A DNA stretch of 64,000 nt from Utricularia gibba. Its lineage: Eukaryota > Plantae > Magnoliophyta. Below, one piece after another: positions 1,801 to 29,096 of this stretch. How positions within the stretch are numbered: position 1 is the first letter of the stretch; each line of letters begins with the position of its first letter. The stretch lies in assembly GCA_002189035.1 (NCBI GenBank), contig CM007991.1, positions 4,836,001 to 4,900,000 of the forward strand. Direction: 5' to 3'. A program made the position numbers and the translations under genes. Under the pieces are notes generated by a model that worked only from the letters and a program-made list of their open reading frames with translations, was not told the origin of the DNA and did no database searches.

Positions 1801-2559
1801 GATTTCTACATCTCCATCATCAATTTCATGTGGCAGAATTCTTGAACTTGCAATGTACATCATTACTTATTCACTTTAAGGGAATGAAACATGTCAACAT
1901 CGACATAATATTTAACGAAAAACACAATTGACAGCAAGCTTCAAAGAAAAACAGAATTCATTTAATATAAATGAATATATTAAATAAGATCTTAGTAAGC
2001 GATTTCACTTAACGAGAACTCTGTTTTTGTTTTAGATTTTTCTTTTTTTATTATCAGCATTTGAAAATATTTTATTTAATTTTTAGGTGATTTTTAGTTG
2101 TTATAGTTAATGTTTTAATGTTCTTTTAGAGGAATTTTCTCCCTTTGGATTCTAAGATTCATAAGACTACAAGAAAAAATATTTGTGAGATGATTGTCCA
2201 CTATAAATAATGCGAAAAGATTTCTAGACACGTGACAGCGACACAAATTTATGTCTATTAAATGACAGTTTGCCAATGAGCTACGTGATTTTTTGTTGTT
2301 ATAGTTAATGTGTTTATGTTCTTTTAGAGGAGAACCTCTTTTCCCGTTCGATTCGAAAATATGTTCTTTTAGAGGAGGAGCTCATCTCCCCTTGGATTCA
2401 AAAATTAAGAGGAGTACGAGAAAACAACATTACGATAGGGAAAAAAAGACCAAAAAGTAAGCTGCTAACTCAATCATGGGCCATCAAAGTCAAATTCCCG
2501 ATGAACTATTTGAAAATACAGCGGAAGATTTGGAGAAAGATGGTGGTGATGGACACTTG

Positions 2560-2834
2560 AAATAAACATTACTAAACCCCCATTTCCAGGAAAATTATAG
2601 AGCAATGAAAAAAGGACTGAAGCTTAAAGAATAATTTTGAATTTAAATTCAGCAATGGTAATAATGAAAGTTGTTGATTATTTGAATCAAGTTCCAAAGG
2701 GGTTGAAAATTTTTAAGGAACTATGGTGTGATTCAAAAATTTTTTCAAGGAGAAGGATGATGTGATGATTAATGCAAGTATTGATACCCTTATTGATAGG
2801 ACTCCTTCCTAAATGTGATGATATAGGTATACAT
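2560..2834 (+). mobile_element. Old Ty3/gypsy gag-protease linker remnant, host of later insertions; continues at 9001-9076 and 17167-~17300
   Basis: Reads KVVDYLNQVPKGLKIFKELW, like VEYLRQVPKGMKVLKDL at 31644-32207. Rejoined empty sites read GIHLSTKIGGFSV and PMKVYEL. Confidence 0.6.
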
Positions 2835-4183: not shown

Positions 4184-4189
4184 AATTTT

Positions 4190-4207
4190 TGGCGCTGTTG
4201 CCGGGGA
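4190..4207 (+). other. Primer-binding site (tRNA-Asp type, Athila)
   Basis: tggcgctgttgccgggga, one mismatch to TGGCGCCGTTGCCGGGGA, 6 nt after the LTR end. Confidence 0.9.
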
Positions 4208-4497
4208 GTTGAATTTTTTTGTGTTTGGTGTTGTGTGTGTGATTTTTGTTTTATCTTCCTTTTTGTTTTCTTGTCTTTTTCCTTTTTCTTTCTGTTTTTC
4301 TTCCCTTTCCTTGTTGTTTCTTTCCCTTGTTTCCGTTTCTGCTTTGTTTTTCTCTTTTTATGCAGCCAGGTCCACCAAGGGCTCGTCCAAGCCTGAGATC
4401 TTACAGAGAAGTTTTATATCCTTTGGACCAAGAGGTGGAACGAAACTTTCTTGCCAAAAAGAGAGAGTAGACGTCCTGTTCAACCACTAGAGACATC

Positions 4498-5820
4498 ATG
4501 GCAACACATGTACTCGTTGGAGTACCAATAGTGCCCGAGACCCAGGGAGAACAACCTGACGGAAACTTTCCAGTACTAGTTCCCACTAACTATGGACCAT
4601 CAAGGAGGAAATCACTGCAAATCATTTAGACCGTCCCTTATGCATCATCTTCGATGGAGAAGAAGACTATGAGCTACGTCCTTACTTATTCCAGATGCTT
4701 CGAAAGTTTGCTGGAAGGGAAAATGACGACCCCAATCGTCATCTACGTGAGTTGCACATGGCTTGTGCATCCATGCGCCCCAAGGGAGCTACGGAGAATC
4801 AAGTCAAGCTTAGAGTATTTCCCTTCAGTCTTACCGAATGAGCTTTGGAGTGGCTCTATGGACTTCCCCCTTCATCTATCGCCACATGGAAGAAGATGGT
4901 TCAAAAGTTTTTGGATCGCTATGCACCACTAGGAAGAGCTTCTGCCAGAAGGAGAGCTTTAACAACCATGATGCAGAGTGAAGGAGAAAACTTGCAAGAG
5001 TATTATGATCGTTTCAACCGAATCTGCAACTTCTACCCTCAGCATGGACTCACTGAAGGCCAGATCTTACAGCACTTCTATGAAGGATTGACTCCTATGA
5101 TCCGAGGACAGATGGATGCCGCTTGTAATGGATCATTATTAGCGAACCGTCACAGTGTTGATGCCCACAGACTCATTGAGCAAATGACTGCTAATTCCTA
5201 TTCCACAGCCAATTGTTATGACAACTCCTATAGACCACCTGGTGGAAACATTGGAATAGCGAAAGCGGTCTATGGAGTGGACAACTCAGAAGTACTGGCT
5301 CAACTTGCAGCAATGAGCGACACATTGAAGTTTGGTCTTCAAGCCTTGCTTCAACAAAAGGAAGGATATCAAGGAACCTCAAGTTCTATGCCATCTCACT
5401 TTGACTCTGGATCAAGAATTCCTGAAATGCCGGTGGAAGAAGTCAATGCCTTTTATCAGAACCAAGGTGGGACATACAACTATGGAAATTATCAGATGCC
5501 TCGAAGAGACCATCCTGGTTTTTGCTGGAGACAGCCAGCACCCCTAGTCAAGCACCATCATTAGGGAACCCACCTGGTATTACTCATCAGACTATCACTG
5601 GACCACCTCAAACATTGCAGATAACTTGACCTCCAGAACAACACATGGTTCCATATCAACTGAATCACAGTTTAGAGGCCATGGTCAAATCTCTCGCTGA
5701 AAGCACCTCCAAGATGCATGTGGAGCAGAAGGACATGAAGGGCCAAATCACAAGTATACAAGGCCAAATTACTCAGCTTGCGCAGGCAATGAACCGCTTG
5801 GAAACAAAATGAGGACTGCC
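4498..5820 (+). pseudogene. Athila gag (Retrotrans_gag), with stops and frameshifts
   Basis: KFAGRENDDPNRHLRELH...KLRVFPFSLTE*ALEWLYGLPPSSIATWKKMVQKFL...QSEGENLQEYYDRF; ORF 4845-5564. Confidence 0.85.
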
Positions 5821-8544: not shown

Positions 8545-9000
8545 GTGAGGGTACGCTGGCAGGACCTCTTATTCTCACGTTCGTCCAAGGAGGAGCAACA
8601 TCGGGCTATTCCTGTGCCTTCTTGCAAGAGAGTGTAAGGGAGGGTAGGCAATTCCTTACTCCTATAACCGAGTACTCGAGAGGACCAGAGAAGAGTGAAG
8701 ACACAACGAACATAACTGGACATGATTCCAAACCCAGAAACATTTACTTTATTTAAGGTTCATCACTTACGTTCATTTTAGTTGTTTGCTCAAAACCCCT
8801 CTCATTCCCTTACTCAAGCTTCATCATCAATGTTTCTCGCACCTTTTACCTTCAAAACCATTTACAAATCGTGACAGTTGTATTCGGGGTGCCTCACCTT
8901 TCACTCAAAAAGAACTCCTTGTGTTCGACACCCGTACTACGCTTTTGTGTTTTATGAGTTTTAAAAGTATTAAATTTTTTTGTGGAAATGACACGCATCA
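8545..9000 (+). repeat. 5'-truncated 3' LTR of family A element
   Basis: Near-identical to 3728-4183. No PPT or U3 start. Confidence 0.85.
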
Positions 9001-9600
9001 ACATTTATCTACAAAAATTGGAGGATTTAGTGTTTAAGGTTAGACAAGGGATGTTTAAACATGGTGTTTCCAATGAGGGCGCGTTTGGTTGCAGGTTTTA
9101 GGTGGGTTACGGCGTGGGTTTAGTCATAAACCCACGTTTGGTTCGTGGGTTTCAGGTGGGTAAAAACAAACCCACTTGTTGACCATAAACCAGGTGGGAA
9201 CCCGTGGAGCTGGGTTTAGCTAAACCCAACTCGGCACTTCCAATTTTGCCCTCACGTGAACTACATTTGAATGCAGGTCTACAACCCAGAATTTGTTCGT
9301 GCTTTGCCAGTAGCGTCGCCTGTTCAAGCGTAAGAGGATGGTCTTTCGGTAAGTATGCTTTCTGCTCTTGGTGGGTTGGTCCACGGTAGCACCACGAGGG
9401 GCCGACTACGCCAGCACCGCATAGTGGATTTTTATCTGTGAATTTCCAATTTCAGAATCTGTGGTGCTGTTTCCGTGAACCAATTTTGCTCAATTTTTGT
9501 GACTGTTGAGGGGACATGGATTTTGAAACGGAGGGTCATGTTATCTTGAGTGCGGCAGCGGTAGTTTTGACTGAATACTTGGTGCAGATGAATGTGTTAG

Positions 9601-11101
9601 TGTTGGGTTTCTCGTATACATCGTATGTCTCAAAAGCAGCGGAATTTTAAAATTTTGAGAAACCCCCAACGCAGATCTTGGAATACAGTATACATCAGAC
9701 TAAGGGATGCTGAAATACCTTTCAGATGACTCTGTTGTTCACCAACCGCCAATAGGAGACAGCCTCTATGGTATCCACACGTGGAGCACTCCGTCGATAA
9801 CCTTCTCAAGGCTCTTGAATGCTGGTCGAATTCCTCAGGTGCTGGGTAGAGAAAAAACGCCTCCTTGTGGATTAGTCTCAGAGAGCACGAAAACCCATGG
9901 AGCAGATCTCAAGATCTAAATCTTTTGATAGATATATGGTAACATATCAAATCATATCTCCGTAAAGATCTTATCTTGTGGAGATATGTATATGTTCCAA
10001 ATCTTATCTATATATGATCTTTCATTTTGAGTTTAATCAATATTAATCTCAAAATAACTCTCAATGTAATTTATCCACTTTACCAATTACATCTCATGTA
10101 ATTGTGTCATTCTATTTTATATCGTTGAGTGACTCCACTATTGTGTGTGACCCTATAGGCTTCTTCAATCAAAGCCGTAATATTGGATTTATTAATTAAC
10201 TCTTAATTAATCAAATCCATCATTATCGATCATGAGTGATGTCTAGCAACACATCATGATCCCAAGATGTAAGAATAATCAGGTGAACTTATTGAGCCTT
10301 TCCATGACTAGCCACCATGCAATGAACAGCTTTCATCATACTTATATCTCATTCGATACTAGAACATGGGTGTGTGTCTTTCTGAGGTATGGAACTTATA
10401 ATTGCATTCAAGCACTAACACTCAATGACCTACTCAAACAATTCGAGTGTCATTACCCTAGGCCCAGGACTTACTGTTAGGCTTTGATGCAATTACTTGA
10501 GATATGATCTCATCGCTAACATGAGTGATGAATCCTTTATTGATCAATCAACTATCTCCAGCCTTAAGGAGTCACATCCCTACTCATCCATACTAGGCAA
10601 GCCATGGTTAGGCTCTCATTAGTAATGAGCGAAAATGCGAGATTAAGATCAAGATAACTTTGTTGACCTCAAGTCTAAGTTTAATTGCACGGCTGTCATA
10701 TTCGAGATCTTGCTATTGACACTTGGTTAGCTTCCCATAGTAGCATCTCGAAGATGAGTCATCCAGTGAATCGATTCTCTAATTGACACCCACACATAGG
10801 TTCTAGTAATCTCATTACATCAATTGTGAGAACCATTGCCTAAACAATTTAGGGAACTCAATGTGTGCCAGCTTATCCGTATTTGTGATATCCTCATTTC
10901 AAAAATACTCTAGCTAGGGAGTTTTTAACTTGATCATGAGTGCTTGAAGAATCTCACATTATGATCTCATCATAATTTCTATAGCACATAGATCAACTAG
11001 AGGATTTTATCAATGATATAAATTTGATCACAATTCAAAGTAAATATCATAAGATAAGATTTACCAATGAGTTGATTGTCTCTAGAACACATACACTAAC
11101 A
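9601..11101 (-). mobile_element. Solo LTR of the Angela-like copia family
   Basis: tgttggg...cactaaca ends; GTTAG TSD at 9596-9600 and 11102-11106; homologous to 56794-58292. Confidence 0.93.
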
Positions 11102-11884
11102 GTTAGTATACTTACATTGGAGGAAATACCGTAGGGGACATAGGCTAAGACGCAAGTATTCACTTACACACAAGATTCCTAGAGAAGTTGAGTTTATTAG
11201 TAGGTTGGTGAGTGATGTGAACAGCGTATCCATTGAGAATTTGAGAATCAGCCGAGATGCATTGGGTGTTTTATGCATTGGTTATTGTTGTTGTTAATGC
11301 AAAGAACTGTATGTGTGCTATATCCAAGATTCATGCATTTTTAAGGAATTTATCGATGGTATGTGTTCCACATAAGAAAAAGGTATTTGACCTACATTCA
11401 ATCAAAATCTAAGGGCACATTTGGTTGCTGGGTTTAGGTGGGTTGCGGCGTGGGTTTAGTCATAAACCCACGTTTGGTTTGTGGGTTTCAGGTGGGTAAA
11501 AATAAACCCACCTGTTGACCATAAACCAGGCAGGAACCCGTGGAGCTGGGTTTCGCTAAACCCAGGGGGGGGGGGGGTCGGTTTAGCTAAACCCTTCTCG
11601 GCACTTCCACTTTTGCCCTCGTGTGAACTGCATTTGAACGCAAGTCTACAACCCAGAATTCGTTCGTGCTTTTACAGTGGCGTCGCCTGTTCGAGCGCAA
11701 GAGGGTGGGTCTTTCGGTAACTATGCTTTCTGTTCTTGGTGGGTTGGTCCACGATAGCACCGCGAGGGGCCAACCACGGCAGCACCGCGCTTGTGGATTT
11801 TTATCTGTGAATTTCCAATTTCAGAATCTGTGGTGCTGTTTCAGTGAACCTATTTTGCTCAATTTTGGTGACTGTTGAAGGGAC

Positions 11885-13166
11885 ATGGATTTTTTCACGG
11901 AGGGTCATGTCATCTTGAGTGCGGCAGCGGCAATTTTGACTGAATACTTGGTGCAGATGAATGTGTTAGTATACTTACATTCAAGGAAATACCGTAGGGG
12001 ATATAGGCTGAGACGCAAGTATTCACTTACACACAAGATTCCTAGACAAGTTGAGTTTATTAGTAGGTTGGTGAGTGATGTGAACAACGCATCAATTGAG
12101 AATTTGAGAATCAGCCGAGATGCGTTGGGTGTTTTATGTAGTCTATTAGAAAATCGTTCTAATATTAGGTTTGCATGTTTTTAGGAATATTAGGTCATCA
12201 TAAAAAAATGCGGGTGCAGAAGCATACCTACGGGAGGAGCACCGAGACTGTGTCTGTGAAAATGCGGTGCTCTGCCTCCATGAGGTGCTGTTAGAGACCC
12301 CGGTAGTCGCTACAAAATGTGCATCCGAAGGAAAGTTTAAACACTTCCAGGTTGACACATCTTTCATGCTTATTTTTACGAATGTGTATCCTAAAATTGA
12401 TTATGCATTTGTAGGGTTGTGTTGGAGCCCTAGATCGCACATACATCGGTATAGAAATCGAAAGGGGGTGATATCCACCAACGTGTTGGGTGTATGTGAT
12501 GAACAAATGAAATTTATATATGTGCTTGCCGGGTGGGAGGGGTCTGCTGCAGATAGTCGGGTGCTCAACGATGCACTATCACGATCCAACGGTTTCCGTG
12601 TACGCGCAGGTATTTAACTTGTTTAGCCCTTGCGCATGTGATTCCAATGATTTTTTGCACCTGGTATACGTGATGACACAGGAACATATTATCTATGTGA
12701 CAATGGATACGCCAATAGAGAGGGCTTTTTGGCACCATACCGTGGAGTCCGTTACCACTTGAAGGAGTGGGGCCAGGGAAATGGAGCACCCCAGAATGCG
12801 AAGGAGTTATTCAACATGCGGCATGCATCAGCCAGAAATGTTATTGAACGAGCTTGGGGCATGATGAAGATGCGGTGGGGTATACTACGGACGGCTAGCT
12901 ACTATTCTGTAGACACACAGACCCGCATTGTATTGACATGTGCTTTACTTCATAACCACATTCGAAAGGAGATGGTGGTCGATCCCCTGGAGGATCAAGT
13001 CCCATTGGACTTCCAAGATGAAGCTGGGGACACGAGCTATCCAGAAGATGTCACGACATCTACCGGAGGGAATCAAGCATGGAATAGCTGGCGTGATCAG
13101 AAGCCGAGGGGATGTACACAGAGTGGCTGGCATCCCGCAGGCGCCACTAGTGTAACACTGTTTTAG
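11885..13166 (+). pseudogene. PIF/Harbinger DDE transposase (DDE_Tnp_4/HARBI1-like), multi-exon, with deletions
   Basis: GCVGALDRT, RYRNRKG..TNVLGVCD, AGWEGSAADSRVL, YYLCDNGY, YHLKEW, FNMRHASARNVIERAWG, ALLHNHIR. GT-AG introns near 12350-12413 and 12610-12680. Confidence 0.92.
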
Positions 13167-13842
13167 ACATTGTCATGGTAGTGGTTATCCTTAATTCCCG
13201 TATCGAACCTACCGTGTCGTTTGCACTCCAACTTGAACTTGAAATTGCAAAGTATTTGGTAGTTGATGCACAAATTGTTGGCATTGTACCATAGTATCGT
13301 GTGTTACCATGGTAACACACAGTGGATCATTGGAGCCAACACCGCGATCCTCATTTGAGGTGCTATAGAGGCTTGTACGACACCAACGTTGTGGGCAGCA
13401 CCATGTGTTTCATTGTATCCAGTGCTCATAAAAATTAAAGATGAAATACGTGTGAAGCTGATGCATAGTAGTGAGGGTATTTGGTATTTGACCGAACACC
13501 GCAAACCGTAATATGCGGTGCTTCTGTACGCTTGGGCTATGCCGCGTTCAGTGCTGCACCGAATGTTTCCTCGTATCTGGTGCTGTCAAAATTTAGAAGT
13601 ATATGTGTATGTAGCTGGTACATGTTAGCATGGGTGATTGGTAGTACAATAATACTCCATTTGACGCAACACCGCGCTCCGTAATATGCTGTGTTTCTAA
13701 ATGCCTGAGGTACGCTATGCATTCCACAGCACCGCGAAAACATAATCCGCTGTTCTGAGTTCCAAAAACAAAATGCCATAAAATATTGCAGTTATCCAGC
13801 ATTAAATGAAACACCAACGTTAAATGAAACATAAAATGCGCA

Positions 13843-15271
13843 TATGATGATTGGTGACTAGTTTTGTATGGGTATGCCCACTCACCGCTGCAGAATGGCC
13901 AACAACGTTGACATTGTCAGAGAATGTGGGACACCCATAAGGTAATCATAAACAATTACTTCGGATATTCACACGTATTGTTGAACAGTACTCATGTTTT
14001 TTTTTTGTTTGCGTTGTAGGCATAGAGGTATTGCCAAAACGTGCGGCAAGGAGGTTTGTGAATTTATTCTCTTGCAGAACAAAGTCCTTGGTGGACGTCT
14101 TGCCCCCCTTCATCAATGCCCTTAGGACACATCATTTGTGGTGCGGAACCCCTCGACACCGTAGACAACGTGGGAGTACAAATGATGATCTTGAGGAGGT
14201 GACCCATGAAGAGGATGAAGATGTGCAGCTAGAAGTCGGGGGCAACACGGAGGGGCCAACACCGATTTCGACACACGACGACGGGTGCGGTGCTGCCACT
14301 ACACAGTATATCCAAATGGACAGACTGTATGCAGAGAATCTTGATCTCTATGGTCGGCTTGCATGATATGAAGCAAGGTGGCCATACGGTGGACCATCGA
14401 GTGATAACACGGCCCACCACGGAAGTTGCTTATATTTGACGTGAATGGCGTACTTGCGGACATTATGTATCCTCGCGAAGTCAGATGGGGAGCGCTGAAG
14501 CTGGATGCCGTCATTTACAGGCGAAACAGTAATGCAATGTCATTGATATGCATTTAATATTTGGTGCATGTGTCAGTACTATTTCTTGTGCTTGTAGTGT
14601 ATCTTCGACCAAGTGCACGTGAGTTGATACAGTTTTGCATGGAACACTTTGACGTCACCATCTGGTCTTCAAGAGGGCGGTAAGACTGACCACCTAGCAG
14701 ACAAGGGGGTCCGCATTCCTGCTGACATTTTTTTTTCTGACGACATGTGGCAGTGAACAATTGCATGATGTGATTCAGTGGTTACTAGAGACTGCAGCAG
14801 CCAGCAAGCTCGTCTTCCAATGGGATGGATCCAGGTGTGTGGACACCGGCTATCCGGTGCACGACAACAGGAATAACACAGTTAAGCTTAAGCTTTTGAA
14901 TCATGTATGGGGCGCCAACCAAGAGTTCAAGGGCAAATATCACCGTCTTAATATGCTTCTCATCAATGATGCGCCGTACAAATCACTACACAATCCGGTG
15001 AGTTTCTGGTTGTGCTCATTCTCCACCATCTTGCATCCTATTTCACTTGTTTAGTTTCATTCGACACCTCGAAAATGCCATATTTCCAACCACCTTCAAG
15101 TACACCGCGGTCAATGATTGTTCGCTTGTTCGAGGGGGAGATATTAGGACGTTCCTGGAAGCTCTGATTGACCAAATGGATGTACCCACGCACGTCGATC
15201 GCCATCGGGTAGGTCAACTTCCAATAGATGAGGAACACCCATTGTGGAAGCAATACAAGACTCTTGTGTAA
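13843..15271 (+). pseudogene. Third Harbinger gene: FCP1/NIF-type HAD phosphatase-like protein with remnant N-terminal domain, multi-exon
   Basis: KLLIFDVNGVLAD (14423-14461), VYLRPSARELIQFCMEHFDVTIWSSRG, KLVFQWDGSRCVDTG, MLLINDAPYKSLHNP, AIFP...GGDIRTFLEAL...GQLPIDEEHPLW. gtaat/gtaag/gtgag intron donors. Stop at 14364-14366 and a 1-nt frameshift. Confidence 0.85.
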
Positions 15272-15345
15272 TCGATGGTGCACCTTTGAAATTGCATGGA
15301 TCTTGCGTGAACTATCCTATGTTGACCTTGTTAGTTTTTTATCGA

Positions 15346-15590
15346 CCACTTATCGTAATGGCACCGGATGTTCAGCATCCGGTGCCGTCTCTGGATTTGA
15401 AACCTTGTGTGTAGACGTGGTGCTTCGTAATATGCAACACCAACGCGGTGCTAGTCCACTTATCGCGATACCACCGGATGTTATAACATCCGTTGCGTTC
15501 ACTGGATATGCTTCTTTGTGTCTAGACGTGGTGCTTCGTAATATGCAGCACCAACGCGGTGCTAGTCCATCACTTCTCGATAGCACCGCT
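15346..15590. repeat. ~110-bp tandem repeat (2+ copies) with an 11-bp-stem hairpin
   Basis: ccact unit starts at 15346, 15456 and 15567. ggcaccggatg-ttcag-catccggtgcc at 15360-15386. Confidence 0.85.
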
Positions 15591-15797
15591 ATGAATGGGG
15601 CGGTAGTTGCAGTACAATGTTTGCGGAAAAGTGATCAAGAAGGAAACACCGCGCTCGTTCATACGCGGTTCTTCTAGCTCATGAAGTCAGAACACTGTCT
15701 ACCCTTTGCAATGCTCATGCCAGTTGAAAGGATGAATAGAAGATGAAATACATCTAGTCCATGAGTCTAACATAAGGCGGAGCACCACACAACAGAT

Positions 15798-16850
15798 TTA
15801 AGATCTACGTTCTGATGCTAAACCACGCACAATAAGCTCTCTTTCACAGTCACTGGAGGCAAGGAAGTAGCGCAACCTCGCAGGGTTGGAACTAATTGTC
15901 TCTGCTATGGTAAAACGTTCAATGGCAGTTAATTTCACCGACATACCTCTAATGAACTCCCTGCCTGACGCTGATTATCCACCAACTCCCGCGCTTGCTG
16001 CACCACTGTTAATCCCAAGTGACGTAGCTCTTCGCATGTGCGCACATTAAGCTCCTTCATTTCTTTGATGAACTGCACATCATCGTCGATTCCCCTCGGT
16101 CCCTGCCGCTTCGTCCATTCCGCTGCGACGAGTCGGTGCTGTTGTGTGACTCGGAGTCCCTACTAGGCGTGACGTTCACACCCTCCATAGTGCAACCAAT
16201 TGGGTCACAAGGTGTGTCAGTATACGAGAAGTTCATATCGTGTCCAGTGCTATCCGGGTCCAGAGGGCAATCCGAAGATACTTCCAGATTCTCCCCAACA
16301 TCTTTTATGAATTTCCTCTTCCTGGTCGCATGAACATAGCTCATCGTTTTTTCTCCTGTAGCTCGATCCTTCCCAAAGATTTCCTGCCACTCCATGTAAT
16401 ACGGCCACGCTTTGTGTCTTAGGGTGCGCAGTCTGGGTGCATGCTAACATAATAACACGGTCAGCACCGAATATAACAACGCGACAACAAGGCATACGTA
16501 CCGGATCAATCTCCTTCCAAACCTCATCGTCTGTGTCTACGGTGTAGGTCAGCTCACTGAAACCGGTGCCCGACCTAGATAAAAAATCTACAAGGAGGTA
16601 GTAGTCTTTTTTCTAGGTATGCACCTTGCTAGATATATGCGGGTGTGCGCGAATGTCGGTTCTAGGGCGAAGTTTCAAGAACTCTGTCTCTAACGCTCGG
16701 TGATACCCACCCTAAAACCATTCTCAATTTTCCAGCCTTCTTTCACTATCGGTTTCAAAGCGTGCAACAAGTCTTTCTCCTCATCTGGCTTCCAGGCGCG
16801 TTTCGTTCTCTTGTGAGAGTGTTCCACCACGATTGGGCTGTGCATACCTG
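15798..16850 (-). pseudogene. PIF/Harbinger Myb/SANT-like DNA-binding gene (Myb_DNA-bind_3 type)
   Basis: KRAWKPDEEKDLLHALKPIVKEGWKIENGFRVG, SGTGF..., WQEIFGKDRATG; C-terminus MKELNVRTCEELRHLG...ERRS*. Confidence 0.85.
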
Positions 16851-17389
16851 CAATCTGTGCTGGAGGAAAGAAAACAGCAAGAAAAAAGCACCTACACCGA
16901 GCACTTACCACAAGTAAACCGTAAAATTCACTCAAAATTCAACGGATTTCGAACGACAAACTCTCCGCAACTAAGGGAGTATACAAACTGGACATAACCC
17001 ATGGCTGTTCACTCTCAATTACTGGTGAAATCGAGAGTTCATTTAAATCCAAATAATGTAAACCATCAACCAAACACGATTCCTAAATAAACCAACAAAA
17101 CCGGGTTTCCTAAACCCAAATAAACTAAACCTGGGTTTAGTCCAAACCCAGCAACCAAACATGCCCTGAAGGTTTATGAATTGATTCTGCAAAGGTTGAT
17201 ATAATCACTAATATTACACCACAATGGAATGTAAAAGATGATCCATCTTTGGTCCATGTGGGCTTACTTGAGCACCTACAAATATCCTGCCAAACCCTAA
17301 TTGATTTAGCTTCTACACAAAACTTACAATTGAAAACTAACTGTTTTTATGAATGGACATATACTTATTACTACTATATTTACATTCTA

Positions 17390-19170
17390 GTAAAATATTT
17401 TATGAGATACTTCATCCTGTGAATTTTTGGAATGACAGGAGAAAAGTAGTATACAAAAATCATTTGAAAAAAGACCTGAAATCAGAGGAGCATTGATGAA
17501 TCCCACCAAGATGATGATGAGTATTTGAGAGAATGTTAAGGATGTGACACACGTGGATACTTTTGACATCAAAATTATTTTACTTAGACCAATCACAACG
17601 AGTAAGAGTAAGAAAATTGAAACTACACTCAATAATCTACTCAACCATAGGAGCTCAACTACTTTAAAATGGATTTATCTTAAACCCCAAAACATGCCAT
17701 TATCATTGATGTATTCTATTGGACTCGGTAGGCTTTCTTTTAATTTGGTTTGGGCTTTGTAATGTGATAGCTCAACTCTAGAATATAAAGACTCTATAGA
17801 TGTACTCTTTGAAGGGATCTTTAGCTTATTTCATGAATTTTGTGAGGAATTTCATTTTCTTTGAGTACTTGAACAATCTTAATTTATTAAGCTCTTGAGC
17901 TTGTGGTGTCCAAGGATTATCAGTTCCAATCTCTCTTCAATCTAAATTGTGGCTTTTAATTTACCTTTCCTTCATAGTCTAGATGCAAAAGATTCATTCT
18001 CTTATGGATAGATTTGGGTGGGTTCCTTTCTAATTATCAAAATCACCTCATGTTTATGGGTTGCTAATCTCTTTAAATTAGAGGATTACATCATTTGATA
18101 TCAGAGCTTTGGGATTACTTCTCCTTATGAATATCTTGTTCTCCTTTTAGTTTTTCACTTCCTGTTTATTCCAAAACAAAAAAAGAGAGTCACAGCCTTC
18201 TCGATATTTTAGCCTTTGGCAAAACAAAAAAAAAAAGAAGAAAAAAAAAGGTGCAAAGGAAGTTCATTGAAAAAGAGCTCGTAATTCACACCCAATTTAA
18301 GTAGCAAGAACACCTTAAAGATCAATTTCAAATGTGTAAAAGAGGAGTGTGAAGGCACCCATCACTTGTTATTAAATTGTCACTATCATCCCATTATAAA
18401 ATTCCATTTGTTTCTTGCTCATCTCTCTATTTTATCCTTTTCAACAAGTAATCTATTTCTTGTTTTTCTTTTATCTCAATGATCCATTCCTTGTCATTTA
18501 CTTGTTATTATCATCCCATTTTAAAACCCTCTTTATTTATTACCTTTTCCTCTATCTCATCAACTTTGACAAGCAACATATTTCGGGTTTAGTGTCCATT
18601 CCTCTGATTCATATCCTCTTCTGTTTATTTTTCATCCCTTTTTTTTCATCTAATCCAATAAGCAGCCAGCCATTGACCTTATTTTAATTCAGCCACTCTA
18701 CTTGTCCCTATCTTAACTTAATTATCATTCCTAGCCTCACTTAATCTCATCATAACACCATGACCATTACCACTATGGAAGTGATTTCATTATTGGAATG
18801 CCATGAGATCTAGAATGATGATAGTAAAGAGTGCATAAAGGACTTGAAGCTTGAGGATTAAGTGGTAATAACCGTGAACCTTGAACAGGGTGAAAATGAC
18901 AATGTACATGGTGATATTAATAGTATCAAGATGAAGATACTCAAATTTCAAGGAAATAATGATTCGGATGTGTATCTCCAATAGGAAACTAGAGTAGAAC
19001 ATGTCTTTGATTGTAATAACTTTTTGAAAAAAAAGAAAATCAGAATGGGTTCCATGGAATTCAATAATTATCTTATAATTTGGTGGGATTAATTAGTGAC
19101 TAAAAGAAGGATTGATTCTAAAGAACCAATTCATACTTGGGCTTAGATGAAAAGAATCCTAAGGAAACTA
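17390..19170 (+). mobile_element. CRM-like chromovirus gypsy fragment: LTR end, PBS and gag start
   Basis: catca at 18089-18093 then ttgatatcagagc (tRNA-Met PBS, one mismatch). IKMKILKFQGNNDSDVYLQ*ETRVEHVFDC...IIWWD gag motif. Left boundary approximate. Confidence 0.65.
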
Positions 19171-19249
19171 TCATCATAATGTTATTATGCTTCCCGAGTC
19201 ATATTGGGCTACATGTGTGTGTTGGTTTTATCATGGGTTGAGTATTAAC

Positions 19250-20860
19250 ATGTTGCAGCAATGGTTGGAGCGGACGTGCCAACAGTGAAATGCAGGAGAA
19301 GTGATGATAATATTAAGACCAAAAGATACTGGAAACCTAATGAAGAATGCTTTCTGATCCACGCTCTTAAGGATATCAATTAAATTGGGTGAAAAGCAGA
19401 GAATGCATAAAATAGTTATTTTCTAAATGATTATTATGCATTATTACGTGTTAATTTAGAATTAAGTCATCCAATTAAGAGTAATATTAATAACTATTTT
19501 ATTTTATTAGAAAAATCTAATTATTGTCATTTATATATATTTTTGAATAGTTTTTCATGTGCTTTCACCCAAATTGGCAAGAATCAATCTTGGAGTGTTG
19601 CAACAGACAAGATACTGATATTTCATGATTGATACGTGACTTGGATCCATTGTAGGCAGAAGGGTGACATTGTTCAAGGCTCATGGCTTACGACATGCCA
19701 AAGTCTGCAATAATAATTAAAACTAGTTATTCGGAAAAGACCAATGACAATTGAGGCGAGAAAAATAAAAGAGGAAATGGAATCTCTTTATTAAGAATTG
19801 CATCTCTTAGTTAATATTCATTACTTACGTTGCATTTTGTATTCTAGTATTTCGAAACCCCTTTTTCAAATGCATGATAATTTGTGATAGGTTAACATAA
19901 AACACTTTTCACAAAACTCAATTTCTATTGACACTCGTATTATGCTTTATTTGTTTTCTAAGTTTTTCATAACTAAAATTTGTTGAGAAAATGACACGCA
20001 ATACCCAGTTTAAACATCAGATGCACGCCAAATATGCAATCAAAGATTCATAACTAGAAAAAAAATTACGACACCCTATTTGACTTTCTCAAAGAGTCAA
20101 GTAATAGCTTTAATAACTCTACAAACATGGTAGACCCTAGTGAGGATTTATAGGCGGAGTTCAAATAGGTATTGTTATTCTAATGTGTATGAGTAGATCG
20201 TTCATACAAGATTGTTTAACTGTACAATGAGAAGGTGTAGAACTTGTTGGGGTTTAAGTGCTAGCCCTACTAGCCACATTGGTGCATTATCATTGGGATA
20301 GAACTACTTGAGATTTTGCGGAGTGTGTCCCTAATGCTGCTAATGCAACACACCAAGTTGATAACTCTATGGTTGGATTGCAACAACCAATGCATCTTCT
20401 TGAGTACCCTGAAGTGGAGGCCAACTCGAATAAAAATGGTGACCAGTGATTGCATGATGCATCCTTTGTATATGAAGAGTATCCCTCATCAGGGGAACTT
20501 TTGGAAATCACACAAGTAATTTCTCTACACCGATCTATGGTGACAAGCCTAAGAAGAAAAGGAGGCATGGTCTAGAACTTAATACCTTGATGGAGGAGTT
20601 GAAGGAAATGAGTAACCGAACAAACGATGACATCACACAACTAGGAGAAACTCTTACTACTGAAACCAATGACCTATGGGAGCATAGAAATGCAGCTGTT
20701 GACATCATTAGAGGAATTCCTTTGCAATTAACTACATGCAGTGTTTAGGAATAACTGAGGTCATTTTTAATAAGCCCATAAAACTACAACTTTTTTTGGA
20801 CAGCAAAAGTGTAGAATGCGAGCTTATGGTGGATAGGATTGCAAAAGGCCTATAATATGT
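19250..20860 (+). pseudogene. Harbinger-2 Myb/SANT gene remnant
   Basis: TKRYWKPNEECFLIHALKDI. C-terminus LKEMSNRTNDDITQLG...IIRGIPLQLT matches Harbinger-1 MKELNVRTCEELRHLG...FIRGMSVKLT. Confidence 0.75.
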
Positions 20861-21039
20861 GTTACAACTTCAATTTGACTTTGTGTTTTTCTTTTTTTTA
20901 ATCATATCCACCTATGATATCCATGTATCGTGACGATCATGTTGCTTTCATTGATAATATTACGTTTTGTATTTTTGGTATGAGTAGCATATCTTTGCTT
21001 TTAATTTGCATAACCATACACCTTTATCAAGTGGTGTAA

Positions 21040-21600
21040 TGTGTAGAAGGCACAGTGGCAAGCATCGTCCCTTCTAGGCACCAGAAATATGCAGAGCATT
21101 GCCTGGAAGAGGTGCACCAATTTAGACTGTGTGCATATCACCTGACCTTACCTCCCACATGCATTTTGGAATATTGACTGCACTACATTGCCCTTTAGAG
21201 GCATGTGTCATAGTCTTCTCAACATTGAAAATATGTGGATGCGATGCCTGTAAGAGGTGCACCAATTGAGACCATATGCATAGAACCTAGCCCTATCTCC
21301 CATATGCACTTTGGAATTCACTGCACTACGTTGTCCTTGAAATGTATTTGTCCTAGTCCTCAAGGCACCGGAATTATATAGATTAGGTGTCTAGAAGAGG
21401 TGCACCAACCTACACCATGTGCATAGCAACTGGCCCTGCCTCCCACCTACACTCTTGAGTATTGACCATTGCCCATTAGAGGCATGTGTCCTACTCTTCT
21501 AGGCACCCAAAATATGCAGATGTGATGCCTGGAAGAGGTGCACCAACTAAGACCATGTGTGTAGCACCTGGCCTTGCTTCCCACATGCACTCCGGAATAT
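21040..21600. repeat. ~140-bp tandem repeat, 4 copies
   Basis: ggtgcacc core at 21111, 21256, 21399 and 21537. Confidence 0.85.
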
Positions 21601-21681
21601 TGTTTGGTTTCCATGATTGAAATAGAGTGAATAAAATAGTAGTGTTTAGAAACCCAAACCACTATTACATGTTATGAATGT

Positions 21682-23415
21682 TTATGCAACCTTTTTGCAA
21701 TAATTCCATAAAGGGTGTTCAATATCCAGCGGAGGCTGTCCAATTCGTGCATGCTTCACAAAGTTGGGTACATCATCTACTTCTAGTAGACCTTGAAGGA
21801 ATGTGTGTATTTCTTCACACTCACCTAGCGTAGCCTCCCTTACATCCATGTACTAGTATGGCATCAAGAAGACAACGTTTTCATGTTGTCTCACAAGAGA
21901 CGTATATAAGCATGAGCACCTAACATATATATTAGAACATATGAATGCAACTTACTTAACTGAGATTCTAATGAACTTGAATGAAGAGTTGTCATATATA
22001 TTAGAACATGAACTATTTGGATCAAGCCCGAACACTCACTTGATTATCTCATGTAGTTGTCGCTATAGAAAAGTGCACATGTTAGAGAAATAGATAGTAG
22101 TGCAGGAACTATTGTTTTCATAGAGTGGGACTTATGTGCCCCTCGAAGACCATATGCTAACATCGAAGTTCATTAGACATCATTGGATGAACTCACATGC
22201 GAAGGGCCTGAGGAAGACTCTATACGCAGGAAAAAACTAGAAGACCACTTGAACATCACACAATCATGTGGCGATCTAAACATGTCTTACTATTTTGCTC
22301 TTATATGACAGCGTCTGGTTTCTGATGCAGCCTTTTGTACTTGGCATTAAAGAAAATGTCTGCAAGCATTCCATTGACATCAAACACAAGCAGCTTGTGC
22401 ACATGTCACTTGATCGAAGAAGTGAGGCCAATGTATGCCCACCTCCTTTCATACCAATCAAGCCTTGCACATAGTTGGGCATTCTCTTCCAAAATTCCAT
22501 CCACATCCACACCAGCAGTTAGTTGCAGATATTCTTCCTCCATGTTGCTCTCAGCATCCCTCTGTGGGTTAGAAATAAATGTTAGTGACATCTCTTCCTC
22601 AATGATCACATTGTCAGGTTTTGGGCACTCACCTATCACTCAGCCCTAACCGCACAAGAAGTGTCGAGTACTAACGATGTCCATCACAGGGGGTACTATG
22701 TCGCTCAAAGGCTTGCTCTTTTAACTAAACATAGTCAACTAGGCATCCTCCCCTTACGTCAATAGTCTATAAAATCCTACAACATGATTAACCAAATAAC
22801 ATAAATCAAAATATGCTAGCCATGCAAGTGTACTAGATCACATGTTACCCTTTGTCTTTCCGATTGTCTTGGAGAAGCCGAGAGTAGTTGAAATTCGTAG
22901 GTCGTTAGGAAAACACACCCAAATGAAGCTTGTCTACCAAGGATCATATCCACGTAGAATAGAATTGACAACTGCAATACCTGGCTTGCCCTTCAACGAG
23001 AAATGTTTAGTTTTCCAGTTTTCAATACACACACTTACAGCAAAAATATTGGTATGACTATTGTAATTTTTTACTCCATGCACACACTCATAAAAGCTAG
23101 CACATGAGCTATTGAGTGAGGAGTTAGGTGAGGCAATGGGACCTCCAAATATGTCAGCAACTTGCACACAAAGGGTGGTGGTGGCAATCGAAGTCCACAT
23201 CGAAAGTGTTTAGTGGACACAAAAAAATCCTGTTACTCCAACTCTAAACGTAACCTCACCATCAATGGTCTCATCCCTTGTGCCATAGATATTAGGTCTC
23301 TAGAATCATAAACTGAATTTGTTGTTTCTTGGAAGTAAGCATTTCTTCGGATAGACAAATTACAAGAAGCAAAAAATGAAGCAGACGATGCAGCTAAGGC
23401 AGAGACAATATGCAC
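21682..23415 (-). pseudogene. Harbinger-2 third gene: Transposase_28/TRP28-like domain plus FCP1/NIF HAD phosphatase-like domain
   Basis: HFRCGLRLPPPPFVCKLLTYLEVPLPHLTPHSIAHVLAFMSVC; FSLKGKPG...YDPW*TSFIWV; ENAQLCARLDWYERRW; KLLVFDVNGMLAD (22358-22396); VFLRPFACEFIQ*CLMNFDVSIWSSRG; RIGQPPLDIEHPLW. Many stops. Confidence 0.8.
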
Positions 23416-23519
23416 TGGTTTGTAGTGTGCAACGATGAATGCATGGTGAAAGGATGTGGTGATTGGGTTTGAAGGTTTTTTTTGAGGCCAAGATATGCAA
23501 GGCTGTCTAGATCAGTCCG

Positions 23520-24602
23520 TGATGTGTGTTATTTCCACAACAAATTTGAAGGATTTTTAAAATTTGTAAAACACAAAATGCATAGTATGGGTATCAAATA
23601 TAGGGAGTTGTTTTTCCAATCAAGGGTAAAGTAAATGTAAAATTTGTAAAGTAAAGAGTGCGAGAAATGTAAATGATGAAGCTTGAGTAAGGGGATTGTA
23701 GACAAACAACAAATAGAACGTAAGCAATAAACCTTAAATAAAGACAATGCTCTTGGGATTGCAATCTTGCACAGCTACGTTCCTTGCATCTCCACTTGGT
23801 TATAGGAGTAAACAATTTTCTACCTTCTCTTACACTCTCTTGCATAGAGTCAAGTAAATAGTATGATGTTGCTCCCCCTTGGACGAACGGGAAGATACGA
23901 GGTCTCGCCTTCATACCCACATGGTCAAATTGTGAACATGTATCTCCTAATCTAGCCACTCACAATGAATCCCATAAGCAAGCTCTTATAAACATAAATT
24001 GAGAATGTCATCATATCCAATGCTAGAAAAATAGCAATTATGGTAAAATATTCGTGAAATGATAACAAAGATAAAATGAGTTTCTACTTCTGTTTGTTAC
24101 TATTCACAGTTGGGAATAGTTACGCTGAACTGTGTTCTTGAGCTTGTTCTTCACATTGAGGCTTTTCCTCAAGAAGATTCTTCTTCTTCACCCCTTTCGT
24201 TTGTTATGGAGCTTCTTCGTGTGTGTTCTTTTCTGTTGAAGCTCTCTTTTCAATTCTCTCATTCCAAAGATATCTCCCCTTCTTTACTCTAATGTGTTGT
24301 TTCTGACACTAGTACTATTACTGGCCTAAACCTACAAAACTGTAAACCTTTGGATATTGTGGCTCCTTTAGCTTGATCCATACATCTTTTAGTTTGGTTT
24401 TTATGCTACTCCTCCTACTTAACTTAATTAAGCATTAGTAAAAAAAGATAGACTAAATCAAAGGAATTTGTGCACTTTCCAACATAAACACAAAATAAAA
24501 ATAAACATCACATAAAATATGAAAAACCGCACAAACCTAACCTAAACCACAACAAAACATCATAATTTTGTATTATAAAATTTTAACAAAATATGTGCAT
24601 CA
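23520..24602 (-). mobile_element. Athila-type solo-like LTR (related to family A) without TSD
   Basis: On minus it starts tgatgcacatattttg and ends ggaaataacacacatca. 23630-23900 resembles the family A LTR. Flanks are gtccg and atacc. Confidence 0.65.
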
Positions 24603-24609
24603 ATACCTT

Positions 24610-26330
24610 ATACCCTTCTTCGTGTGATATCTCTCCATTGCGTGAACATTGTCTCAACCATTGAATCTCGCCACTGTGTCCATTTCTTAAGTTTGCTATG
24701 GAGGAAATATGTTGATCATCTTCATAGTCCCATGAATTCGAATTCCAATACTCTTCCAGGATGACTTCTTCACATGGATTGGTTAGCACTTCTTGCTAGA
24801 TAAAATTGTGAAGTAGGGCACATGTGAGTATGATGCAAGCCTATGTTTTAATGGGGTAAAAATTGTAACTTCATAAAATATCCCACCTCATTTTCATTAG
24901 ACTCCATGCCACCTCAATAACGTTCTTCGCAGAAGCATGCTGTAGTTTGAAATATTCCTTTGCATTTTGTGGAGCATTGGACCTGGCACCCCACTCTTTC
25001 AGATGGTACTGAACATCCATATAGGGTGCTAGAAATCCCTGTGGGTTTGTTTATCCATTAGCATACAAGTAATAGTGCCATAGGAAAAATGAAATACATG
25101 AAAGTCACTTGAGACAATGAACTTCCACACATGTTAAGGACTTACCTTTGCATATAAGAAATGCCCTCTGCCGACAAACTACATCTCCTAGCAGCCTACT
25201 ATCAGTGGTTGATCCCTCTCAACCAAAACACAAATAGAAGAACATCAGCATATCATCACACACTCCTAACACGTTAGTGGACTCTATTCCTTTGCGATTC
25301 CTCCACTTTGGTTTATCCTAGTTCTTGACTTTCACCTAGAAATATGAACCATCCAATATGGCCAAGAAACTCTGAAAACTAACTAAGAAAATTACCTCAT
25401 GTAAAATACACATCGCATATCCACAACTACAATGTAACGTCTACATGCATATTTCGAAAATCTGAAGCTAGATTTAGGATCAGAAACATCGATTGGCACA
25501 GGTTTCTTAAGTAAATGTCATGTGATGACAGCATCAAGGAGAATACCACATTGAAATATTTATACACTGTCCAACTGCTTCGCATGAATTCAAATTTTTG
25601 ATGCCTTCTTTCCTATGATGACCTGAAATATCCAAAAACAATACACCGTGCTCTGGAACATTGACATACCTTGAAGTAGTTAATCTACTATTACTTTAGA
25701 GAACATAGCATAAGTTGTTGAAGATATCTACACTTAAGCGTAAGTTTTGAGACAAGCATTTCTTTAGTCAGATAAAAGTGCAGTCGAATGCTCTATTTCC
25801 CAAGGTATTTTTTTGTAGTACAAGAACCAAATACTCCTATCAGTTGGTGTAGAGCAGTAATGCAATATTATCACAATAGTAATTCGCATAATACATAGGT
25901 GCTTACCAACATAATGCGTCGCAACAAGTGCGGCCAAAATAATTTCATTGGAAATGCATCGCAACAAGTGCGGCCAAAATAATTTCATTGGAAATGCATC
26001 GCAACAAGGTCAGCCAAAATAATTTCATTGGAAATGATTGCAACAGCCTCAATAAGCAACGTACAATCTATTGAAATTTTTGCAAAAAAAAAAAAAAAAC
26101 CGCCCAACCCCATCATATACAAAAGAGACAATAGGAACCCTCAGTGTAATTTGAAGCATGGGTTTTATTAGAATATCAAAATTCACTTACTCACCGTCTA
26201 CCTACAGAAACTCAACTGATATGTGATGAAGAGGATGAAAAAAATACACATATATTTGCTGCAGATTTGTTTATGGAGGAAAGGTATTATTGTCAATGGT
26301 ATATTAGCTATCGATGGGTTTCAGAAAACC
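24610..26330 (-). pseudogene. Harbinger-2 DDE transposase remnant
   Basis: HYYLYANG*TNPQGFLAPY, QYHLKEWGARSNAPQNAKEYFKLQHASAKNVIEVAWS, TCALLHNF. 5' boundary approximate. Confidence 0.8.
25919..26047. repeat. 40-bp tandem repeat, 3+ copies
   Basis: tcgcaacaagtgcggccaaaataatttcattggaaatgca twice exactly, then a degenerate third copy. Confidence 0.9.
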
Positions 26331-27884: not shown

Positions 27885-29096
27885 TCAAGCACTCATGATC
27901 AAGTTAAAAACTCCCTAGCTAGAGTATTTGTGAAATGATGATATCACAAATACGGATAAGCTGGCACACATTGAGTTCCCTAAATTGTTTAGGCAATGGT
28001 TCTCACAATTGATGTAATGAGATTACTAGAACCTATGTGTGGGTGTCGATTAGAGAATCGATTCACTGGATGACTCATCTTCGAGATGCTACTATGGGAA
28101 GCTAACCAAGTGTCAATAGCAAGATCTCGAATATGACAGCCGTGCAATTAAGCTTAGACTTGAGGTCAACAAAGTTATCTTGATCTTAAGCTCACATTTT
28201 CGCTCATTACTAATGGGAGCCTAACCATGGCTTGCCTAGTATGGATGAGTAGGGATGTGACTCCTTAAGGCTGGAGATAGTTGATTGATCAATAAAGGAT
28301 TCATCACTCATGTTAGCGATGAGATCATATCTCAAGTAATTGCATCAAAGCCTAACAGTAAGTCCTGGTCCCAGGGTAATGACAGTCGAATTGTTTGAGT
28401 AGGTCATTGAGTGTTAGTGCTTGAATGCAATTATAAGTTCGATACCTCAGAAAGACACACACCCATGTTCTAGTATCGAATGAGATATAAGTATGATGAA
28501 AGCTGTTCATTGCATGTTCACTTGATTATTCTTACATCTTGGGGATCATGATATGTTGCTAGACATCACTCATGATCGATAATGATGGATTTGATTAATT
28601 AAGAGTTAATTAATAAATCCAATATTACGGCTTTGATTGAAGAAGCCTATAGGATCACACACAATAGTGGAGTCACTCAACGATATAAAATAGAATAACA
28701 CAATTACATGAGATGTAATTGGTAAAGTGGATAAATTAAATTGAGAGTTATTTGGAGATTAATATTGATTAAACTCAAAATAAAAGATCATATATAGATA
28801 AGATTTGGAACATATACATATCTCCACAAGATAAGATCTTTACGGAGATATGATTTGATATGTTACCATATATCTATCAAAAAGATTTAAATCTTGAGAT
28901 CTGCTCCAAGGGGTCTTCATGCTCTTAGAGACTAATCCACAAGGGGCGATTTTCTCTACTAGCACCTGAGGAATTCGACCAGCATTGAAAGAGCCTTGAG
29001 AAGGTTATCGACGGAGTGCTCCACATGTGGATACCATAGAGGCCGTCTCCTATTGGCGGTTGGTGAACAATGTAGTCATCTGAAAGGTATTTCAGC
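27885..29096 (+). mobile_element. Doubly truncated Angela-like LTR
   Basis: Collinear with ~50730-51955; both termini missing. Confidence 0.9.

What the first reader, a model, noticed from the sequence alone, without database searches (positions are those of the whole stretch)
13843..23415. The third gene is conserved in a second, divergent Harbinger: candidate three-gene Harbinger lineage
Seen: Harbinger-2 has the same gene in the same slot and orientation (transposase > third gene > tandem repeats < Myb) with matching intron positions. Last exons align ungapped at 26/66 identical residues (hand count). N-terminal parts are also collinear: YDDW-TSFVWVC vs YDPW*TSFIWVC, RTKSLVDVLPP..HLWCG vs KSKPLSDIVPP..HFLCG, ENLDLYGRLA*YEARW vs ENAQLCARLDWYERRW. 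Inference: motif conservation across this divergence implies long selection as a resident element gene, not a recent Pack-type capture. I know of no described three-gene plant PIF clade with this cargo, but could not search.
Basis: partly seen in the sequence, partly recalled or inferred. Interest (0 to 1): 0.92.

Follow-up and report, generated by a model that had tools for sequence, protein, structure and literature searches.

The report
Three-gene Harbinger transposon lineage
Two very different, dead copies of a plant cut-and-paste transposon both carry the same extra spliced gene, a retrotransposon-type domain joined to a phosphatase-like domain, which they inherited from one ancestor and kept under selection, an arrangement I did not find described.

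Summary
Harbinger-1 (H1, + strand, TIRs at 11412 and 17167) and Harbinger-2 (H2, - strand, about 19315-25308) share one layout: DDE_Tnp_4 transposase > third gene > tandem repeats < Myb-like gene.

Evidence that the third gene was acquired once:
- The two copies are collinear at protein level (46% over 166 aa) with no DNA-level similarity.
- They share three intron positions and phases.
- Both lack the same two introns found in host NIF genes, and both have the same insertion of about 5 aa.
- Both share an N-terminal region that was absent from all 260 host NIF proteins compared.
- Their NIF domains form one clade (100/98) outside 70 host representatives.

Divergence matches the transposase (46% against 49% identity). 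Codon positions differ 0.36/0.31/0.65, which indicates long purifying selection. The transposases fall in one starred sub-clade together with Genlisea elements. Ten related loci outside that sub-clade carry only two genes.

Caveats:
- Both copies are pseudogenes.
- No RNA run was listed as holding the gene.
- The arrangement was seen only in this genome.
- The NIF motif is DxN, not DxD, as it also is in the host family.

The scan has already noted the abundant H1 family about 21 times on other DNA of this genome. What is new here is the second, divergent family and the tests for single origin and selection. I found no description in the papers I could search.

The parts
11412..11435 (.). H1 left terminal inverted repeat (AGGGCACATTTGGTTGC...)
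   Evidence: 24 nt, 92% complementary to 17144-17167. Flanks are TAA and TGA. Contigs of other copies diverge exactly at this point (table 7).
11885..13166 (+). H1 transposase gene (pieces 11885-12184, 12204-12614, 12651-13166)
   Evidence: Pfam DDE_Tnp_4, E 1.4e-13 and 4.9e-6. 57-69% identical to Lamiales Harbinger transposases.
13845..15271 (+). H1 third gene. Exons: 13845-13941, 14020-14528, 14598-14679, 14754-14997, about 15054-15271. Lesions: -1 nt at 13855, TAA at 13938, TGA at 14364, -1 nt at 14412, and a frame problem at the exon 4/5 junction.
   Evidence: Exons 2-4 splice in frame with GT-AG. The spliced NIF part scores 199 bits (E 3e-58) end to end against a profile of 70 host NIF domains. 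The family majority restores 13855, and about half of the copies restore 14412.
15346..15569 (.). H1 tandem repeat, 111 bp x 2
   Evidence: TRF. No homology to the H2 array.
15801..16938 (-). H1 Myb-like ORF1 gene (several exons)
   Evidence: Its pieces match genes annotated as PF12776 Myb_DNA-bind_3 in related loci L004 and L006. Pfam does not call the pieces themselves.
17144..17167 (.). H1 right terminal inverted repeat
   Evidence: Loose ends of other copies begin at 17167.
19315..20850 (+). H2 Myb-like gene remnants
   Evidence: Six collinear tblastn matches to H1 Myb pieces. The best is 58% over 31 aa, E 1.4e-7.
21071..21602 (.). H2 tandem repeat, 138 bp x 3.8
   Evidence: TRF.
21682..23232 (-). 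H2 third gene. The Transposase_28 part is 23232-23074. The first exon runs to about 22849, followed by exons 22776-22291, 22217-22138, 22062-21955 (truncated exon 4) and 21900-21682. It has many stop codons.
   Evidence: Pfam PF04195, E 9.9e-9, 35.8 bits. The NIF part scores 108 bits against the host profile. Gene structure.
23490..23990 (.). High-copy repeat nested in H2 between the transposase and the third gene (approximate limits)
   Evidence: Similar to 3718-4183, 8546-9000 and 43465-43930. Depth peaks here.
24586..25308 (-). H2 transposase remnants (C-terminal two thirds, 5 stops)
   Evidence: 49% over 146 aa and 51% over 55 aa to the H1 transposase.

Best explanation
An ancestral autonomous PIF/Harbinger element acquired, once and as genomic DNA, the NIF/FCP1-like C-terminal part of a host gene. 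That host gene belongs to the angiosperm family annotated as 'FCP1 homology domain-containing'. The captured part was joined to a Transposase_28 (TRP28) domain, which is otherwise known from the antisense ORF of Retand LTR retrotransposons.

The chimeric spliced gene sat between the transposase and the Myb-like gene. It was then inherited vertically and kept under purifying selection while the element lineage split into at least two families. H1 is abundant and younger. H2 has fewer copies and is older. Both window copies are now dead.

Shown here: single origin, co-divergence with the transposase, past constraint, and mobilisation of the whole three-gene unit.

Inferred: the protein was an accessory factor useful to the element. 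Its motif I is D-x-N-G rather than D-x-D-x-T, so it more likely binds phosphoproteins or acts as a weak or atypical phosphatase. A role in transcription or silencing control is a guess.
For: - Collinear protein similarity without DNA similarity.
- H1 and H2 NIF domains form a clade at 100/98* apart from 70 host domains.
- The N-terminal region is shared by H1 and H2 and absent from all 260 host NIF proteins compared, that is 150.
- Host genes in Rhodiola and Fraxinus have 5 introns in the NIF region. H1 and H2 keep introns 1, 2 and 4 at the same position and phase, and both lack introns 3 and 5.
- Both share an insertion after ..NP.
- NIF divergence is 46% identity, pN 0.34, pS 0.82. Transposase divergence is 49%, pN 0.33, pS 0.91.
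- Exons are better conserved than introns.
- H1, H2, two Genlisea proteins and one Logan protein form a starred transposase clade at 97/95*. An AU test does not reject H1 and H2 as sisters (p 0.39).
- Ten related loci outside that clade have no third gene.
- In DNA runs of the organism, 1000-4500 contigs at 85% identity or more cover the H1 third gene about as deeply as the transposase and Myb genes, and they end at the TIRs.
- The H2 family is also multi-copy.
Against: - Every copy examined is broken. H1 has at least 5 lesions and H2 has many stops and a deletion.
- No RNA run was listed as holding the gene.
- The arrangement was not found outside this genome. The Genlisea contigs are too short to tell.
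- H2 is a long branch in both trees, so some pull between long branches cannot be excluded.
- The alignments used for codon statistics were chosen by amino-acid similarity, which exaggerates the asymmetry between codon positions somewhat.
- The catalytic second Asp is missing in both the element and the host family, so enzymatic function is doubtful.
- The Transposase_28 part is not detectable in this H1 copy.
Confidence: 0.75

Rival explanations
1. H1 and H2 captured NIF exons from host genes independently (two Pack-type transduplications). The resemblance then reflects constraint on the host gene, not on an element gene.
For: The element NIF part keeps host intron positions, so it did come from genomic DNA. 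H1-H2 identity (46%) is about the same as H1-host identity (40-45%).
Against: H1 and H2 form a 100/98* clade on a long common stem. The non-NIF N-terminal region and its intron are shared by both but absent from the 260 host proteins compared. The same two host introns are missing in both. Both share the same insertion. The gene sits in the same slot and orientation in both.
Confidence: 0.04
2. The gene was acquired once but moved later between co-resident Harbinger families by recombination or template switching. It would then not mark a vertically inherited three-gene lineage.
For: Both families live in one genome. The transposase tree puts H2 nearer to Genlisea proteins than to H1, although without rejecting H1+H2 as sisters.
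Against: The third gene is as diverged as the transposase (46% against 49% identity, both with saturated pS). No DNA-level similarity remains. The Myb-like gene and the overall layout are also collinear.
Confidence: 0.08
3. The third gene is passive cargo with no use to the element. It was carried along because it lies inside the TIRs, and the apparent constraint is an artefact of choosing alignments by amino-acid similarity and of a short real divergence time.
For: All copies seen are pseudogenes. No expression evidence was found. Motif I lacks the second Asp. DNA transposon proteins act in trans, so selection on any one copy is weak.
Against: Third codon positions are near saturation (0.65) while positions 1 and 2 differ by 0.31-0.36, the same pattern as the transposase. 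Splice sites, phases and intron lengths are retained across that divergence. The sense frame scores about twice the other frames. The family majority repairs lesions private to this copy.
Confidence: 0.13

Closest known systems
Canonical two-gene PIF/Harbinger elements (PIF, Pong, plant ALP1/HARBI1-like transposase plus Myb-like ORF1)
   Same: DDE_Tnp_4 transposase, Myb_DNA-bind_3-type second gene, GGGC...GTTTGG TIRs, and a 3-bp TWA-like target duplication. The transposase is 57-69% identical to Lamiales elements.
   Different: A third gene of about 1.5 kb with several exons lies between the two usual genes. Ten related loci have the Myb gene directly after the transposase. A survey of the superfamily lists two ORFs only (PMC4482050).
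Retand (Tat-lineage) LTR retrotransposons with an antisense ORF encoding TRP28 / Transposase_28 (PMC11963269)
   Same: The PF04195 domain is present at the N-terminus of the H2 third gene. That paper reports the domain's role as unknown and the domain as confined to flowering plants.
   Different: Here the domain sits in a class II DNA transposon and is fused to a NIF-like domain. The paper does not mention Harbinger.
Angiosperm host family 'FCP1 homology domain-containing protein' (auto-named TIM50-like). The nearest solved structure by sequence is UBLCP1 (3SHQ).
   Same: Full-length NIF domain (PF03031 in the homologues). The same D-x-N-G motif I. Three shared intron positions. The protein ends at the same place.
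   Different: The element copies have a different N-terminal half. They lack host introns 3 and 5, carry an insertion after ..NP, sit on a long separate branch, and are multi-copy inside TIRs.
DNA transposons that keep an extra gene (VANDAL/Mutator VANC; KI-MULEs with a ULP1 protease domain). This comparison is from my own knowledge and was not tested here.
   Same: An autonomous class II element retains an additional gene across family divergence.
   Different: Different superfamily and different cargo. An anti-silencing role is demonstrated for VANC. It is only conjecture here.

Membership tests
PIF/Harbinger superfamily | DDE_Tnp_4-type transposase | tested here: met
   PF13359, E 1.4e-13 and 4.9e-6 on H1 pieces. 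H2 is 49-51% identical to H1. Both fall among plant Harbinger transposases in the trees.
PIF/Harbinger superfamily | Second gene encoding a Myb/SANT-like DNA-binding protein | tested here: met
   Supported by homology only. H1 pieces match genes annotated PF12776 in L004 and L006. The H2 gene is collinear with the H1 gene. Pfam itself does not call the fragmented pieces.
PIF/Harbinger superfamily | Terminal inverted repeats and a 3-bp TWA target-site duplication | tested here: inconclusive
   H1 has 24-nt TIRs at 92%, flanked by TAA and TGA, which is one mismatch. Other copies end at the same bases. No TIRs were found for H2.
NIF / FCP1-SCP-type HAD phosphatases (PF03031) | NIF domain fold and sequence over its full length | tested here: met
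   Single pieces score only E 0.0065 in Pfam. The spliced H1 domain scores 199 bits over positions 4-214 of a 218-position profile built from 70 host domains that carry PF03031. H2 scores 108 bits.
NIF / FCP1-SCP-type HAD phosphatases (PF03031) | Catalytic motif I, D-x-D-x-(T/V) | tested here: not met
   H1 reads F-D-V-N-G-V and H2 reads F-D-V-N-G-M. The host family also has D-x-N-G, whereas UBLCP1 has D-I-D-Y-T. Activity was not tested.
Transposase_28 / TRP28 (PF04195) | Match to the Pfam model above its cut-off | tested here: met
   H2 23232-23074: 35.8 bits against a cut-off of 26.2, E 9.9e-9. Atlas feature search: 0.96 to PF04195 clusters. Not detectable in this H1 copy.
Pack-type transduplicate (non-autonomous element carrying host gene fragments) | No transposase of its own; recent, fragmentary, usually unconstrained cargo | tested here: not met
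   Both elements carry transposase and Myb genes. The cargo is a complete domain with retained splice sites. It is diverged to 46% identity with pN much lower than pS.

The most novel reading that the evidence does not exclude
A whole sub-clade of PIF/Harbinger transposons, possibly spread across Lamiales-type eudicots including the Genlisea elements, depends on a third protein of its own. That protein is a TRP28 domain joined to a phosphatase-like domain. TRP28 would then be a module useful to transposons, for example against host silencing or for hijacking the transcription machinery, that has passed between LTR retrotransposons and DNA transposons.
Probability: 0.2. Interest if true: 0.8.

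Novelty: new variant of a known kind. Interest (0 to 1): 0.6.

Why it matters
PIF/Harbinger elements are defined by two genes. A third gene held under constraint across deep family divergence would be a new kind of accessory function in this superfamily.

It would also give the first functional lead for two uncharacterised things. One is the TRP28 domain of Retand retrotransposons. The other is a conserved angiosperm family of D-x-N 'phosphatase-like' proteins.

It is directly testable in the established yeast or Arabidopsis Harbinger transposition assays, by adding or leaving out the third gene.

Tried and rejected
- Searching for close protein relatives of the third gene. An exhaustive HMMER search with exon 4 gave only host NIF proteins at 47% identity or less. 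A profile search seeded with all window pieces on a host scaffold gave 819 NIF proteins, and none of the 120 listed carries PF04195. The length filter of the word-based search prevents short exon pieces from finding full-length proteins.
- Rhodiola multi-copy NIF genes as possible element copies. There is no transposase or Myb gene within 10 kb, so they are host genes.
- Two proteins (Mucuna, Cynara) that ranked oddly high. They simply have two NIF domains.
- Transposase_28 remnants in H1 13163-13843. None were found, even with word size 2 and E up to 50.
- TIRs of H2. Only low-complexity or weak pairs were found.
- Homology of the two tandem-repeat arrays. The score equals that of shuffled sequence.
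- Genlisea contigs of the same transposase clade. Only 460-570 bp lie downstream, which is uninformative.
- Expression. No RNA run was listed as holding the stretch.
- The guess that a Harbinger family named 'Kerberos' is a three-gene element. No paper was found.
Full report
**What is there.** The window is plant DNA, rich in nested repeats.

Harbinger-1 (H1) is bounded by 24-nt inverted repeats at 11412-11435 and 17144-17167 (92% complementary), flanked by TAA and TGA. Between them lie:
- a DDE_Tnp_4 transposase (Pfam E 1.4e-13);
- a third gene on the same strand (13845-15271);
- a 111-bp x2 tandem repeat;
- a convergent Myb-like gene. Its pieces match PF12776-annotated genes in related loci.

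Harbinger-2 (H2) is the mirror image on the minus strand:
- transposase remnants 25308-24586;
- third gene 23232-21682;
- a 138-bp x3.8 repeat 21602-21071;
- a Myb-like gene on the + strand at 19315-20850, collinear with the H1 gene.

I found no TIRs for H2. A high-copy repeat is nested at about 23490-23990.

**Checking the observation.** The two elements share no DNA-level similarity, but tblastn links them gene by gene:

| Region | Identity |
|---|---|
| Transposase | 47% over 148 aa, 51% over 55 aa |
| Third gene, exon 2 | 53% over 36 aa |
| Third gene, exon 3 | 67% over 27 aa |
| Third gene, last exon | 39% over 71 aa, ungapped, E 1e-14 |
| Third gene, N-terminal parts | 31% over 51 aa, 44% over 25 aa |

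H1 exons 2-4 splice in frame with canonical GT-AG sites. H2 has the same three introns at the same codons and phases, with nearly the same lengths.

Both copies are pseudogenes. H1 has a 1-nt deletion at 13855, TAA at 13938, TGA at 14364, a 1-nt deletion at 14412, and a frame problem at the exon 4/5 junction. H2 has many stops and has lost most of exon 4.

**What the gene is.** Single exons barely register in Pfam (NIF E 0.0065). An exhaustive search with exon 4 found 179 proteins. The ten that I scanned against Pfam all carry a NIF domain. Exons 2-5 are collinear with them.

The spliced H1 domain scores 199 bits, end to end, against a profile of 70 such host domains. H2 scores 108 bits.

The hosts form a conserved, uncharacterised angiosperm family found in eudicots and monocots. 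It is named 'FCP1 homology domain-containing' or, automatically, 'TIM50'. Its nearest solved relative by sequence is UBLCP1. The host family and the element genes both have D-x-N-G where FCP1/SCP/UBLCP1 phosphatases have D-x-D-x-T.

The N-terminus of the H2 gene carries a Transposase_28 domain (PF04195, 35.8 bits, E 1e-8; Atlas 0.96). This domain is known from the antisense ORF of Retand LTR retrotransposons, and its function is unknown (PMC11963269). It is not detectable in this H1 copy. Earlier notes of the scan report it in other copies of the family, which I did not check.

**One capture or two.** Four independent lines point to one acquisition before H1 and H2 split.
1. In an IQ-TREE PMSF tree of 72 NIF domains, H1 and H2 form a clade with 100/98 support on a long stem outside all host representatives.
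2. The region upstream of the NIF domain is shared by H1 and H2, including its intron. It covers YD[DP]WW-TSF[VI]WVC, KS/PL.D[VI].PP...H..CG and EN..L..RL.WYE.RW. It has no match in any of the 260 host NIF proteins compared.
3. Host genes in Rhodiola and Fraxinus have five introns in the NIF region at identical positions. H1 and H2 keep introns 1, 2 and 4 and both lack introns 3 and 5.
4. Both have an extra five or so residues after ..NP.

The retained host introns show that the NIF part was captured as genomic DNA.

**Selection and co-divergence.** Over 166 aligned codons of the NIF part, H1 and H2 differ at 36%, 31% and 65% of first, second and third positions (pN 0.34, pS 0.82). The transposase gives 43%, 30% and 62% (pN 0.33, pS 0.91). 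Synonymous sites are saturated, so no ratio can be quoted. Even so, the third gene was constrained about as strongly, and for about as long, as the transposase.

Exons align far better than introns (z about 7-10 against 2.5-3). One caution applies: alignments picked by amino-acid similarity inflate this asymmetry somewhat.

**The transposase lineage.** The nearest transposases come overwhelmingly from Lamiales. In an 84-row tree, H1, H2, two Genlisea aurea proteins and one Logan protein form a starred clade (97/95). An AU test does not reject H1 and H2 as exclusive sisters (p 0.39).

Ten related loci outside this clade have the Myb gene directly after the transposase and no NIF or Transposase_28 sequence. 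They come from Salvia, Sesamum, Buddleja and several Logan contigs. The Genlisea contigs end 460-570 bp after the transposase and cannot decide the question.

**Copy number and state of the family.** In four DNA runs of the same organism, 1000-4500 contigs at 85% identity or more lie on H1. They cover the third gene about as deeply as the transposase and Myb genes, and they diverge exactly at the two TIR ends. The three-gene unit is therefore what was amplified.

Most copies have the G that this copy lacks at 13855, which reads YDDWWTSF. About half have the C missing at 14412. Those two lesions are therefore private or recent. C>T and G>A changes dominate.

H2 has fewer and more distant relatives: 139-652 contigs at 80% identity or more, mostly under 90%. 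These also cover its third gene.

No RNA run was listed as holding the gene.

**Interpretation.** The best reading is a single old acquisition of a chimeric gene, Transposase_28 plus NIF-like, by an autonomous Harbinger. The gene was then inherited vertically under purifying selection through the split into at least two families, and all sampled copies have since decayed.

That the protein served the element as an accessory factor is inference. Because the second Asp of motif I is missing, phosphoprotein binding or atypical activity is more likely than ordinary phosphatase activity. A role in transcription or silencing is a guess.

Three rivals are weighed in the report sections and are each unlikely: independent captures, later exchange between families, and passive cargo.

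**Novelty and context.** Seven full-text searches found no Harbinger with this cargo. A survey of the superfamily lists two ORFs (PMC4482050). Repbase could not be searched.

The scan itself has noted the abundant family about 21 times in this genome, and two earlier follow-ups reached similar conclusions for single copies.

This finding adds the second, divergent family. With it come the evidence for single origin, co-divergence with the transposase, and long constraint. It also gives a concrete prediction: elements of the same transposase clade in Genlisea and its relatives should carry the gene.

Noticed in passing
window 9076-9601 and 11102-11275: A second H1-like left end, with its TIR at 9076-9099 and 86-95% identity to 11412-12138, lies just upstream of H1. 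It is split by a 1.5-kb repeat (9600-11101) that occurs at least five times in the window (also 27885-29096, 43935-45415, 50574-52025, 56794-58292).
   Followed up: partly
window 23490-23990 (also 3718-4183, 8546-9000, 35305-35515, 43465-43930): A high-copy repeat is nested in H2 between the transposase and the third gene. Depth peaks here in all four DNA runs, and the region holds a 121-aa ORF (23959-23597, - strand) of unknown nature.
   Followed up: no
host proteins P0012, P0142, P0008 and about 800 others: A conserved angiosperm NIF-domain family has D-x-N-G instead of the catalytic D-x-D-x-T. It is uncharacterised and is auto-annotated as TIM50. It may be a family of pseudo-phosphatases.
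   Followed up: partly
proteins P0001-P0006, P0162, P0163: Several eudicot members of that host family have two tandem NIF domains, and some are fused to DUF724 (Asteraceae, Mucuna, Cynara).
   Followed up: no
window 15276-15285 and four sites in 21071-21602: The 10-mer TGGTGCACCT occurs once just after the stop of the H1 third gene and once in each H2 tandem-repeat unit. The overall alignment score is no better than shuffled sequence, so it may be chance.
   Followed up: partly
loci L004, L005 against L003, L006, L013: Among related two-gene Harbingers, the Myb-like gene lies on the same strand as the transposase in some (Sesamum, Buddleja) and convergent in others (Salvia, Logan contigs).
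   Followed up: no
window 25913-26045: A 40-bp tandem repeat (3.3 copies, 93% matches) lies in the region where the 5' part of the H2 transposase is expected.
   Followed up: no
locus L011 1282-1656: In one related Logan contig, the ORF just downstream of the transposase has a weak Zn_ribbon_GRF hit rather than a Myb-like match.
   Followed up: no
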